Source: Magallana gigas (lineage: Eukaryota). From it: a stretch of 64,000 bases of DNA. Position numbers and translations under genes: made by a program. Under the pieces are notes generated by a model. That model made no database searches. It saw only the letters and a list, made by a program, of their open reading frames with translations, and was not told the DNA's origin. Positions within the stretch are counted from its first letter, which is position 1, and each line of letters begins with the position of its first letter. Where the stretch lies: positions 47,864,001-47,928,000 of the forward strand of contig NC_088857.1 of NCBI RefSeq assembly GCF_963853765.1, in the 5' to 3' direction. This document shows positions 23,113 to 57,772 of this stretch, piece after piece.

Positions 23113-25716
23113 ATGGAAAATTGCACAATATTTTTCATAATCCTTTTATTCGCTACTGAAACGGTTCAAGGACAAATTTGCTCCAATGAGGAGAAATGCA
23201 AATGTACTCCAATACAGAATTTCTTCTTTGAATTATATCACGTGGATTGCTCCAACATGGGACTGACTGAGATGCCATTCAATTTCACTGATAAAGACAT
23301 ATATAGCATTGATTTATCACAGAACAATATACGGAAGGTTACAACAACTAAATATTATTCTAGAACGTTAAAGCAAATGAACTTATCTCACAATGCAATA
23401 AGGAATCTATCGAAATACAGTTTTAACTGGATTCCATACCTTGAAGTTTTAGATTTGTCCTATAATAATCTCACATTGTCCGACACAAGTCTTCCCAATC
23501 TGGTATTCCAATATCTGAGTAACCTTAAGGTTCTGAACTTGTCTCACAATGACGTCATTGGTACAGACCATTACAATGCAGAAATATTCCGTCATACTGA
23601 ATCTTTGGAGACGCTAGTCATTGACGGCTTGCGAAATGGCAACTTTAATTTAACCACATATTCTAATAGGGTTGCTCCATCATTTCATCCACCTGATGAT
23701 ATCGAGTTGAAAAATTTGACGACACTCGTAGTGTCTGGACGAAGTGACCGCAGCAAGTGCCTAATCAAGCATCTGTCAAAAGGCTTTTTTAAGAGCGTTC
23801 CTCGTCTGAAGTACTTGGACATGTCTGCTTGCGCAATCCGATCAGTCGATAAGGAAAGCTTGTCGCTGTTAGAGCTAGAATATCTAGATTTGTCCTACAA
23901 TGAACAGTTATCTTTTCACCCACTTCGAAATATTTCTATACCGCAAACACTGAAAACAATGAAATTCGACAAAGTTCATTGTACATTTGGAATTGGAACC
24001 TATGTGACATCCGATATGGTAAAAATTTTTCAGAACAGTTCTATAGAGAATCTATCTTTTAAAAGCAATAGATTAGAGACGGCTGTAAGCAATGTTTTTA
24101 ATTATCTACCTCAAAATCTAAGCAGTTTGGACGTCTCGGACAACAGACTGACCTTTGGTACATATGGTTTTTCAATCCCTGTTTTGAAAAAATTGAAATA
24201 TTTGAATGTACAAAATCAATTTTATCCACATTTTACAGACAGGAATGGTGAGAATCTGGAGGAGTGTGACGATACCTTCCTATGCTCCTCCTCTCATTCA
24301 GGTGAAATATACCTTGCCGCTGGTGCGGGTTTTGCGAATTATCACTCAAAAGACTACGTGTTTTACGTACCCCCAAGTCTGGAAACAATTAATTACTCTA
24401 ATTCTTCACTAAATACAGTTATCCGTCAGCTTAATATAGACCCGAACAACAGTGTAAAAACCATCGATTTCAGTCATAACTTTTTTGAATGTCTTGATGG
24501 GCCGATTTACGGACTACACGAAATTGAAAAAGTTGATTTTTCCCATAATTATATATCTTTTTTATCGCCCATTTTCTTTGAAAATAGTACAACTTTAAAG
24601 AACTTGAACTTAAGAAACAACTTGTTAGGAAACTGTATGAGCAAACCAAACTCGACCTATTTCGGAAATTTCTGGAATTTGACATTGTTGGACCTTTCAT
24701 CCAATGTTATCCGCTTTGCAGCTCCTGATATTTTTGAAGGTCTGGAATCCCTGGAGACATTGAATCTAAGTTTTAATTTACTCCGAAATGTTTCATTCAG
24801 AATGCACCAGATGCCTTCTCTGAAAACATTAGATCTTTCTTCTAATGAATTTTTGCCATTTTCCGACTCTACAATTCAAATTCTGGAATCGAGACAACAA
24901 ACTAGTCGACTGAAAATTATCCTTAAAGGAAATGAATTTCAGTGTACGTGCGACTCTCTTAATTTCCTCAAGTGGATGCTACGAAACAAAAACACTGTCA
25001 CTGTAGATTATTCATACCTTTGTCGAAATATGAACCATGCCATCAACAACAATGATGAGTTGGACTTGATAAGTAAGATGCTAGATAAGAAATGCGACGA
25101 TTACGAAGAAATCATTGGTGTAGTATCTGGACTTTTTGTTGTTTTCTTTGCGTTCATTGTTGGTGGAGTTATTCATCGCTACCGGTGGAAACTTCGATAT
25201 TTCTATTACATGTCAAAATGGAGCGCTACCATGTCACACAAATCCTATGGTAGAGTATACGACTATGACGCATTTGTTTCTTATGCTGATGAGGAGAAGG
25301 ATTTTGTCATACAGGAAATGACGTCAGAGCTAGAGGAAGTGTCAGACTTGAGACTGTGTCTCCACGAGCGAGATTTTACACCAGGTATATCAATCGGCGA
25401 GAACATAACCAAGGCAATATGTAACAGCAGAAAGGTTTTGTGTGTCGTAACAGAGAACTTTTTATGCTCTCAGTGGTGTATGTATGAACTAGAGATGGCC
25501 CTCACAGACAACAGGTACTCCAGAGACGATCAATCGGTTTTCCTTATCATGTACGGAGGATTGCCGACTGATAGCTGTAAAATTCGTTCATCGATCCGAC
25601 TTATGTCTTTAGTGAAGGAGAACGCCTATCTAGAATATCCTAATGATGAGAGCAATAGAGCAGAATTCTGGAATTCACTTAGAATCATAATGAAAAAAAT
25701 ACGAAATCCTGTGTAA
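23113..25716 (+). CDS. Toll-like receptor B (867 aa, single cysteine-cluster type)
   Basis: Signal peptide, CxxxxxCxC LRRNT, LRRs, NEFQCTCDSLNFLKW LRRCT, TM, TIR (YDAFVSY / LCLHERDFTPG / FW). Acceptor ttttcag at 23064. Confidence 0.97.
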   Translation: MENCTIFFIILLFATETVQGQICSNEEKCKCTPIQNFFFELYHVDCSNMGLTEMPFNFTDKDIYSIDLSQNNIRKVTTTKYYSRTLKQMNLSHNAIRNLSKYSFNWIPYLEVLDLSYNNLTLSDTSLPNLVFQYLSNLKVLNLSHNDVIGTDHYNAEIFRHTESLETLVIDGLRNGNFNLTTYSNRVAPSFHPPDDIELKNLTTLVVSGRSDRSKCLIKHLSKGFFKSVPRLKYLDMSACAIRSVDKESLSLLELEYLDLSYNEQLSFHPLRNISIPQTLKTMKFDKVHCTFGIGTYVTSDMVKIFQNSSIENLSFKSNRLETAVSNVFNYLPQNLSSLDVSDNRLTFGTYGFSIPVLKKLKYLNVQNQFYPHFTDRNGENLEECDDTFLCSSSHSGEIYLAAGAGFANYHSKDYVFYVPPSLETINYSNSSLNTVIRQLNIDPNNSVKTIDFSHNFFECLDGPIYGLHEIEKVDFSHNYISFLSPIFFENSTTLKNLNLRNNLLGNCMSKPNSTYFGNFWNLTLLDLSSNVIRFAAPDIFEGLESLETLNLSFNLLRNVSFRMHQMPSLKTLDLSSNEFLPFSDSTIQILESRQQTSRLKIILKGNEFQCTCDSLNFLKWMLRNKNTVTVDYSYLCRNMNHAINNNDELDLISKMLDKKCDDYEEIIGVVSGLFVVFFAFIVGGVIHRYRWKLRYFYYMSKWSATMSHKSYGRVYDYDAFVSYADEEKDFVIQEMTSELEEVSDLRLCLHERDFTPGISIGENITKAICNSRKVLCVVTENFLCSQWCMYELEMALTDNRYSRDDQSVFLIMYGGLPTDSCKIRSSIRLMSLVKENAYLEYPNDESNRAEFWNSLRIIMKKIRNPV

Positions 25717-57772: not shown

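What the first reader, a model, noticed from the sequence alone, without database searches (positions are those of the whole stretch)
23113..57772. TLR-B/C/D/E are mosaics: each region groups the paralogs differently (gene-conversion shuffling)
Seen: the TIR DNA of B (about 25260-25680), D (48312-48732) and E (57318-57740) is nearly identical including synonymous sites, while C diverges at its TIR 3' end. The C-terminal ectodomain and LRRCT group B with C (about 24370-25110 versus 39100-39830). The start context (GAGTGACAAATGGCAC) and the upstream 700-bp block group C with D. The juxtamembrane WSTTTSHKSYGKVYD groups D with E. Inference: recurrent ectopic conversion or unequal crossover keeps a common signalling module while recombining recognition modules, a germline diversification system for innate receptors.
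Basis: partly seen in the sequence, partly recalled or inferred. Interest (0 to 1): 0.7.

Follow-up and report, generated by a model that had tools for sequence, protein, structure and literature searches.

The report
Gene conversion among tandem oyster TLRs
Four neighbouring Toll-like receptor genes of the Pacific oyster are old duplicates whose membrane-spanning and signalling parts have been kept almost identical by DNA copying between the genes, a process already known from vertebrate TLR1/TLR6 but, in the papers I could search, not described for bivalve TLRs.

Summary
The window is Crassostrea (Magallana) gigas DNA. It holds five intronless TLR genes in tandem: A is divergent, and B to E are 73-84% identical in DNA.

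- At four-fold degenerate sites, B/C versus D/E and D versus E differ at 45-58% of sites in the ectodomain, but at only 13-26% in a roughly 600-bp TM+TIR block (B 25085-25680 and its counterparts).
- Ortholog comparisons are uniform along the gene: about 0.6 against the single syntenic C. virginica gene, and about 0.17 against a B ortholog from a Logan contig. Constraint or a mutational cold spot is therefore excluded.
- The block has sharp edges on both sides, and the C-terminal tail and 3' flank cannot be aligned.
- Two further patches exist: LRR2-5 in B, C and D, and the C-terminal ectodomain in B and C.
- C. angulata's independent assembly shows the same pattern. Unpolished contigs of three other samples show 1.5-3-fold k-mer depth over the block, so it is not a polishing artefact.
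- Nine of 26 gigas/angulata allelic differences in the block carry a state found in another paralog (1.1 expected), which points to recent short tracts.

Verdict: this is ordinary interlocus gene conversion (concerted evolution), of the kind described for TLR1/TLR6. The "diversification system" reading has no support, because every detected tract homogenises. An unchecked scan note (s1-385523) reports a similar mosaic TIR gene elsewhere in this genome.

The parts
18705..21206 (+). TLR-A: intronless LRR-TM-TIR gene of 833 aa. It is a divergent cluster member (about 34% aa identity to B-E) and takes no part in the homogenisation.
   Evidence: ORF; Pfam LRR_8, TIR and TIR_2; identities.
23113..25716 (+). 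TLR-B, 867 aa, intronless.
   Evidence: ORF; Pfam; 96% identical to the C. angulata 'toll-like receptor 4' cluster representative.
37854..40430 (+). TLR-C, 858 aa, intronless. It carries a TIR BB-loop Pro->Leu change. Its TIR is the least homogenised, with 12 synonymous and 8 non-synonymous C-specific codon changes in the block.
46165..48759 (+). TLR-D, 864 aa, intronless.
55166..57772 (+). TLR-E, 868 aa from the first ATG. The listed ORF starts at an upstream TTG at 55097.
25085..25680 (+). Homogenised TM + juxtamembrane + TIR block in B (aa 658-856). It starts just after the last LRRCT cysteine and stops about 11 codons before the stop codon.
   Evidence: Alignment with sharp edges; change-points B/D 25132-25678 and B/E 25099-25678, with 4% differences inside against 28-32% outside; k-mer depth 1.5-3x the flanks in three independent samples.
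39814..40409 (+). Counterpart of the TM+TIR block in C. It is 89-92% identical to B, D and E.
48137..48732 (+). Counterpart of the TM+TIR block in D.
57141..57736 (+). Counterpart of the TM+TIR block in E.
23335..23650 (+). Second homogenised patch, roughly LRR2-5 (aa 75-180; LRR numbering estimated by eye). It is shared by B, C (38073-38388) and D (46384-46699) at 88-91% identity, while E is only 70-72%. Short C-like and D-like runs segregate among individuals at 23526-23559 and 23592-23605.
   Evidence: (B-D fragment 23333-23643, p = 0.0005).
24331..25080 (+). C-terminal ectodomain plus LRRCT, where B groups with C (39060-39809). Identity is 91% and four-fold differences are 12/76, as close as B is to its own ortholog x5.
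37820..38038 (+). 5' module of C (start context, signal peptide, LRRNT), which is closest to D (46130-46349): 74% identity against 59-63% for the other pairs.
33434..34165 (+). Isolated block of about 730 bp, 3.7 kb upstream of C. It is 82.6% identical to 42912-43631, which lies 2.5 kb upstream of D. Its nature is unknown: a relic of the duplication, a regulatory or 5'-UTR element, or a repeat.
42912..43631 (+). Copy of the same block upstream of D.

Best explanation
B, C, D and E are old tandem duplicates of one ancestral TLR gene. C. virginica has a single gene at the syntenic site. Repeated non-allelic (interlocus) gene conversion has overwritten parts of the copies with one another's sequence.

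The main tract is about 600 bp and covers the transmembrane helix, the juxtamembrane stretch and the whole TIR domain in all four genes. A second tract covers LRR2-5 in B, C and D. A third covers the C-terminal ectodomain and LRRCT in B and C.

Shown:
- Neutral sites are homogenised only among paralogs and only inside these tracts.
- The main tract is an internal patch.
- Exchange has continued up to about the time of the gigas/angulata divergence.

Inferred:
- The tract limits stay put because conversion needs high identity, and divergent flanks block heteroduplex extension.
- Purifying selection on a shared signalling module tolerates homogenisation there, whereas selection on ligand-binding LRRs removes most conversions in the middle of the ectodomain.
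For: Organism and synteny
- The genes belong to C. gigas. The C. angulata orthologs lie in the same order. C. virginica has a single TLR next to a 258-aa gene (in the place of C. angulata's C1q gene) and the same sulfotransferase gene.

Neutral sites
- pS among paralogs is 0.5-0.8 in the ectodomain and 0.03-0.3 in TM-TIR.
- Four-fold sites differ at 0.45-0.58 against 0.13-0.26 (Fisher p = 1e-5 to 6e-7, with C-D at 0.012). Controls are flat: virginica 0.56-0.65 against 0.59-0.65, and x5 0.17 against 0.16.
- Raw counts in the TIR core (402 nt): B-D 12, B-E 15, D-E 21, B-x5 28, and about 100 to virginica.
- Raw counts in the ectodomain (1424 nt): B-D 446 against B-x5 147.

Patch structure
- The edges are sharp and the tail and 3' UTR cannot be aligned.
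- Self-BLAST similarity ends at the CDS.

Statistics
- PHI-like z = -10.4 and GENECONV-like p <= 0.004.
- Change-point 2*dlnL = 90-237.
- The segment trees differ from one another.

Recent exchange
- 9 of 26 allelic differences in the block are shared with paralogs, against 1.14 expected (P = 1e-6; P = 0.004 with the null tripled).
- These include an adjacent two-base change (C 40058-40059), a linked pair of sites in D, and a linked trio in E. Only 3 of the 9 are CpG transitions.

Not an artefact
- C. angulata's separate assembly gives aB-aD 15 and aB-aE 19 differences in the TIR core.
- Logan contigs of three unrelated DNA runs have 1.5-3x word depth over 25137-25727, and in the listed pieces of the best-covered run (X10) they stop near the tract edges.
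Against: - Segments were chosen after looking at the data, so the per-segment p-values are optimistic.
- No single segment rejects the whole-gene tree by the AU test (0.11-0.38). Topological conflict alone is therefore only moderately supported, and the strong signal lies in depth of divergence.
- Only one haplotype per species was compared.
- The species of the x5 contig is unknown, and x5 may itself have been converted by its own paralogs.
- There is no GC-biased-conversion signature: GC3 of the block is 0.44-0.46, and the single-copy virginica gene has 0.47.
- My PHI and GENECONV tests are re-implementations, not the published programs.
- No conversion event was observed directly.
Confidence: 0.85

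Rival explanations
1. Unequal crossing-over built chimeric genes. For example, C could be a hybrid with a D-like 5' part and a B-like 3' part, formed when D paired with B. On this view the mosaic reflects a few reciprocal exchanges rather than conversion.
For: The gene order B-C-D is what a D5'/B3' hybrid would give. C shares its start context, its 5' module and a 730-bp upstream block with D, and it shares its 3' ectodomain with B.
Against: A crossover predicts similarity that continues into the flank. Instead, the B and C 3' flanks and C-terminal tails cannot be aligned. B-C four-fold divergence jumps from 23/51 in S3 to 12/76 in S4, so the two parts have different ages. Between the 730-bp block and the ATG nothing aligns. 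The TM-TIR block is bounded on both sides in all four genes.
Confidence: 0.1
2. There has been no DNA exchange. The TM-TIR region simply evolves slowly (constraint on codons or RNA, or a mutational cold spot), or the ectodomain mutates unusually fast.
For: The TIR is the most conserved protein part: pN is 0.00-0.05 there, against 0.2-0.45 in the ectodomain.
Against: Orthologs show the same synonymous and four-fold divergence in TM-TIR as in the ectodomain: virginica 0.59-0.65 against 0.56-0.65, and x5 0.16 against 0.17. Allelic differences in C and D are spread evenly along the gene.
Confidence: 0.02
3. The near-identity of the TIRs is an assembly or polishing artefact, caused by short reads of paralogs cross-mapping and overwriting one another.
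For: Copies 95-99% identical over 600 bp are the kind of sequence that polishing can homogenise.
Against: The same pattern, with the same paralog-specific differences, occurs in the separately assembled C. angulata genome. De Bruijn contigs (no polishing) of three unrelated DNA samples cover the block at 1.5-3x the depth of the flanks with 0-2 differences per piece.
Confidence: 0.02
4. One reading: the exchange is an evolved, adaptive germline mechanism that shuffles LRR recognition modules to make new receptor specificities while holding the signalling module constant.
For: Each gene is a different combination of modules. Short C-like and D-like runs segregate in LRR2-5 of B among individuals.
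Against: All detected ectodomain tracts homogenise. The most variable part (B aa ~346-436) shows no exchange. Excess sharing of polymorphism is significant only in TM-TIR and not in S1, S3 or S4. Nothing distinguishes this from the passive by-product seen in any tandem family.
Confidence: 0.1

Closest known systems
Gene conversion between mammalian TLR1 and TLR6 (Kruithof et al. 2007, PMC2077338)
   Same: The genes are tandem TLR paralogs. The N-terminal ectodomain follows orthology, while a C-terminal region that includes the TM and most of the TIR is more alike between paralogs than between orthologs. The tract limits are reproducible. The authors interpret this as limiting the divergence of a shared functional module (abstract).
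   Different: Here four genes take part, in a protostome (oyster). For D and E the tract starts at the TM and leaves out the last LRRs and the LRRCT, which are shared only by B and C. There is also a second, N-terminal tract (LRR2-5). Independent recurrence in many species, shown for the mammals, could be tested here in only one other lineage.
Gene conversion in the vertebrate TLR1 family, including avian TLR1A/B and TLR2A/B (Huang et al. 2011, PMC3125219)
   Same: A family history made of duplication plus several conversion events, which confounds trees (section titles and abstract).
   Different: The lineage and the TLR subfamily differ. I read only the outline, so the tract positions in that paper were not compared.
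Lineage-specific tandem expansions of bivalve TLRs (Saco et al. 2023, PMC10279657)
   Same: It describes the same kind of tandem, subfamily-internal bivalve TLR cluster and attributes expansion to tandem duplication and diversifying selection on the ectodomain.
   Different: The main text of that survey contains no occurrence of 'gene conversion', 'recombination' or 'concerted'. The homogenisation seen here would make TIR-based trees date such duplicates too young.

Membership tests
Toll-like receptor (single-cysteine-cluster type I receptor) | Leucine-rich-repeat ectodomain. | tested here: met
   Pfam LRR_8 E = 2e-37 to 4e-25 in all five proteins.
Toll-like receptor (single-cysteine-cluster type I receptor) | [quoted passage not shown] | tested here: met
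   Pfam TIR / TIR_2, above the gathering score in all five proteins.
Toll-like receptor (single-cysteine-cluster type I receptor) | A single transmembrane helix between the LRRCT and the TIR. | tested here: inconclusive
   A hydrophobic stretch of about 23 residues follows the conserved LRRCT cysteines in the alignment. No TM predictor was run.
Interlocus gene conversion / concerted evolution | Neutral-site divergence between paralogs drops inside a bounded tract, while ortholog divergence does not. | tested here: met
Interlocus gene conversion / concerted evolution | Inside the tract, paralogs of one species are closer to each other than to the ortholog from another species. | tested here: met
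   TIR core: B-D 12 and B-E 15 differences against B-x5 28. In the ectodomain the order is reversed: 446 against 147. Tree support is moderate: RELL 0.88-0.91, and AU for the orthology tree 0.12-0.15. Only one outside lineage was available, of unknown species.
Interlocus gene conversion / concerted evolution | Significant recombination or fragment statistics. | tested here: met
   PHI-like z = -10.4, and GENECONV-like p <= 0.004 for four pairs. Both are my own re-implementations.
Interlocus gene conversion / concerted evolution | Polymorphisms shared between paralogs. | tested here: met
   9 of 26 observed against 1.14 expected in TM-TIR, including linked runs and an adjacent two-base change.
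Interlocus gene conversion / concerted evolution | Direct observation of a non-reciprocal transfer (pedigree or sperm typing). | not testable with these tools
   This needs family or gamete sequencing.
TLR1/TLR6-type domain-limited conversion | Independent conversion of the same region in several species. | tested here: inconclusive
   gigas and angulata are too close to count as independent, C. virginica has one copy, and only one paralog of the x5 lineage was found.

The most novel reading that the evidence does not exclude
Homogenisation of the TM-TIR cassette may be a general property of the very large oyster/bivalve TLR repertoire, not a quirk of this cluster. In that case many 'recent lineage-specific expansions' inferred from TIR-based trees would be old duplicates made to look young. 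The shared cassette could then be kept by selection because neighbouring receptors signal through a common, possibly heteromeric, interface. An unchecked scan note of a similar mosaic TIR gene elsewhere in this genome (s1-385523) points the same way.
Probability: 0.3. Interest if true: 0.5.

Novelty: new member of a known kind. Interest (0 to 1): 0.35.

Why it matters
It gives a clean, well-controlled invertebrate example of domain-restricted concerted evolution in innate immune receptors. The single-copy C. virginica ortholog and a second-lineage ortholog serve as internal rate controls.

Practical consequences:
- Phylogenies and duplication dates of bivalve TLRs built on the TIR domain, the only part that aligns widely, will be biased towards young, species-specific clades.
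- Short-read variant calls in these TIRs will mix paralogs.

It does not reveal a new mechanism.

Tried and rejected
- GC-biased conversion signature: GC3 of the block is no higher than in the single-copy virginica gene, so this gives no support.
- Simple unequal-crossover origin of C: rejected because the flanks do not align and the B-C parts have different ages.
- AU tests of quartets and of six taxa: these were informative, but they show that the short segments cannot individually reject the whole-gene tree.
- P0008 as a possible sixth paralog: it is only an alternative, internally deleted gene model of D.
- RNA reads: B is barely covered in the one polyA run sampled, at about 1% of the run. 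Nothing could be learned about the 5' exon structure or the 730-bp block.
- Literature: searches for gene conversion with TLR in Crassostrea, molluscs and sea urchin found no paper describing it. An amphioxus preprint mentions conversion only for LTR dating.
- Orthologs of D and E from the x5 lineage were not among the protein hits. I ran no further search on fragments.
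Full report
**What is there**

The window has five long ORFs, all on the + strand. Each is an intronless LRR-TM-TIR receptor by Pfam. A (18705-21206) is only about 34% identical in protein to the others. B (23113-25716), C (37854-40430), D (46165-48759) and E (ATG at 55166, ending at 57772) are 65-78% identical in protein and 73-84% in DNA.

Protein searches place the window in Crassostrea (Magallana) gigas. C. angulata has the same genes in the same order. C. virginica has a single TLR, 55% identical to B. 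It sits next to a 258-aa gene (in the place of C. angulata's C1q gene) and the same sulfotransferase gene that follow E in C. angulata. B-E are therefore duplicates of one ancestral gene. A 3-kb Logan contig, here called x5, carries a gene 90% identical in DNA to B. It behaves as a B ortholog from another, unidentified lineage.

**Checking the observation**

- C departs at the 3' end of its TIR.
- B and C are about 90-91% identical over the C-terminal ectodomain and LRRCT, where the other pairs are 70-73%.
- The 16-nt start context is exact only in C and D, although E has it minus one base.
- The upstream block 33434-34165 / 42912-43631 is 82.6% identical, has sharp ends and is also present in C. 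angulata. It is absent upstream of B and E and from C. virginica.
- The juxtamembrane motif is exact only in D and E.

**Conversion, or merely conservation?**

Synonymous differences among paralogs fall from 0.5-0.8 in the ectodomain to 0.03-0.3 in the last 600 nt. The decisive control is the orthologs. Against C. virginica, pS is 0.5-0.95 everywhere, including the TIR. Against x5 it is about 0.1-0.4 everywhere.

Four-fold degenerate sites show the same thing:

| Comparison | Ectodomain (S3+S4) | TM-TIR (S5) | Fisher p |
|---|---|---|---|
| B/C vs D/E and D vs E (five pairs) | 0.45-0.58 | 0.13-0.26 | 1e-5 to 6e-7 (C-D 0.012) |
| B-C | 0.28 | 0.22 | 0.39 |
| each gene vs C. virginica | 0.56-0.65 | 0.59-0.65 | 0.73-1 |
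| B vs x5 | 0.17 | 0.16 | 1 |

Raw counts make the reversal plain:

| Region | B-D | B-E | B-x5 | to virginica |
|---|---|---|---|---|
| TIR core (402 nt) | 12 | 15 | 28 | about 100 |
| Ectodomain 23651-25080 (1424 nt) | 446 | 449 | 147 | about 590 |

The mutation rate and synonymous constraint are therefore even along the gene, and only the paralog comparison is distorted. That is the signature of DNA exchange between copies.

**Anatomy of the tracts**

The main block runs from just after the last LRRCT cysteine to about 11 codons before the stop codon. Its coordinates are B 25085-25680, C 39814-40409, D 48137-48732 and E 57141-57736. Likelihood change-points put the B/D tract at 25132-25678 and the B/E tract at 25099-25678, with about 4% differences inside and 28-32% outside. 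Beyond the 3' edge, the C-terminal tails and 3' UTRs cannot be aligned at all. The block is therefore an internal patch, not the end of a crossover product.

A second patch (B 23335-23650, about LRR2-5) is 88-91% identical among B, C and D but only about 70% to E. A third (B 24331-25080) joins B and C, with four-fold differences of 12/76. The adjacent S3 shows 23/51 for the same pair, so the two parts of B-C have different ages. The first 200-300 nt favour C with D.

**Statistics and their limits**

- A PHI-like permutation test on 205 informative sites gives z = -10.4.
- A GENECONV-like fragment test gives p <= 0.004 for B-C, B-D, B-E and C-D.
- The five segments give five different ML topologies. 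Many of these are mutually rejected by AU tests.
- With x5 as the marker of orthology, B groups with x5 in S1 and S3. It groups with D in S2 and in the TIR core, and with C in S4 when C is in the quartet; against D and E alone, S4 still joins B to x5.
- The honest caveat: the short segments have little power, and the whole-gene tree is not rejected by any single segment (AU 0.11-0.38).

The title's claim that each region groups the paralogs differently is thus moderately supported as topology. It is very strongly supported as heterogeneity in depth of divergence. The segments were defined after seeing the data, and my PHI and GENECONV tests are re-implementations.

**Not an artefact**

C. angulata was assembled separately and shows the same block with the same paralog-specific differences. 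I also laid Logan contigs, which are de Bruijn assemblies with no polishing, from three unrelated DNA samples on 21000-26900.
- Word depth over 25137-25727 is 27-39 in two of the samples, against 6-13 in the single-copy flanks. In the third it is 11-25 against 10-17.
- In the listed pieces of X10, the best-covered run, the contigs stop at about 25104-25169 and 25595-25650. The other two runs have gaps in the same stretch.
- The pieces over the block carry 0-2 differences.

This is what several near-identical copies embedded in unique DNA should give.

**Recent or ongoing exchange**

Comparing each gigas gene with its angulata counterpart, 9 of the 26 differences inside the block have both states present in other paralogs, where 1.14 are expected. 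The binomial P is 1e-6, and 0.004 even with the null tripled. The other segments show no clear excess. The nine sites form tracts rather than scattered hits:
- an adjacent two-base change at C 40058-40059, E-like in gigas and B/D-like in angulata;
- two sites 60 nt apart in D (48606 and 48666), C-like in angulata;
- three sites over 127 nt in E (57499-57625), B/D-like in angulata.

Only three of the nine are CpG transitions.

In the LRR2-5 patch, B of this window carries C-like bases at 23526, 23532 and 23559. It carries D-like bases at 23592, 23595 and 23605. C. angulata has the reverse at all six sites, and so does sample X10, while samples X3 and X5 show the alternative bases at the first three only.

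**Mechanism**

The best account is repeated non-allelic gene conversion among old tandem duplicates.
- Unequal crossover may have contributed to the C-D 5' relationship: the gene order B-C-D fits a hybrid with a D-like 5' part and a B-like 3' part.
- Crossover cannot explain patches bounded by unalignable DNA, nor the absence of collinear homology in the intergenic regions.
- I found no GC-biased signature.
- Why the limits are stable is an inference: conversion needs high identity, so divergent flanks stop it, and selection tolerates homogenisation of a common signalling module while removing it from ligand-binding repeats.
- C is partly escaping. It has 12 synonymous and 8 non-synonymous private codon changes in the block, including the BB-loop Pro->Leu change noted separately by the scan.

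**Comparison with what is known**

This is the pattern Kruithof et al. described for mammalian TLR1 and TLR6, with tracts covering LRR16-19, LRRCT, TM and most of the TIR (PMC2077338). Huang et al. describe it for the wider vertebrate TLR1 family (PMC3125219).

The differences here are a protostome host, four participating genes, a tract that starts at the TM for D and E, and an additional N-terminal tract. The large survey of bivalve TLRs does not mention conversion or recombination (PMC10279657). My searches found no paper reporting it for oysters. I therefore file it as a new member of a known kind.

An unchecked first-reader note (s1-385523) reports a similar mosaic TIR gene on another piece of this genome. 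That is a lead towards generality, not evidence.

Noticed in passing
window 22477-22727: A 251-bp element with terminal inverted repeats of about 18 bp, which looks like a MITE, lies 0.4 kb upstream of B. Its word depth is 3-4 x 10^4 in all three DNA samples, so it belongs to a very high-copy family. Contigs of two samples skip exactly these 251 bp, so the insertion is polymorphic. RNA reads in this stretch come from the repeat family, not from B.
   Followed up: partly
window 21052-21369: A 159-bp tandem duplication (97.5% identical) spans the stop codon of TLR-A. One sample's contig skips 159 bp (21074->21234), so the duplication is polymorphic. The protein is unchanged, because the first copy holds the stop codon.
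   Followed up: partly
L001:2408-10001 (C. angulata) versus window 21206-23113: The A-B spacer is about 7.6 kb in C. angulata but 1.9 kb here. The extra DNA holds a 311-aa gene call with a faint HTH_psq hit, which suggests a pogo/Tigger-like transposon insertion or a deletion in gigas.
   Followed up: no
window 40058-40130 (TLR-C TIR): C alone has Leu in place of the conserved BB-loop Pro (RDFTLG against RDFTPG in B, D and E), plus seven other private replacements in TM-TIR. It is the paralog least homogenised with the others.
   Followed up: partly
window 31370-31836 and 45486-45968: A second, partly inverted repeat pair (about 70% identical) lies upstream of C and D and is probably a transposable-element fragment. 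A hairpin-like inverted repeat lies at 43640-43760, just after the 730-bp block upstream of D.
   Followed up: no
TLR-B 23113-24420 and TLR-E: B and E differ from their C. angulata counterparts by about 2.8-2.9% in DNA, concentrated in the N-terminal half of B. C and D differ by only 0.2-0.5%. Allelic or species divergence is therefore strikingly uneven among neighbouring genes.
   Followed up: partly
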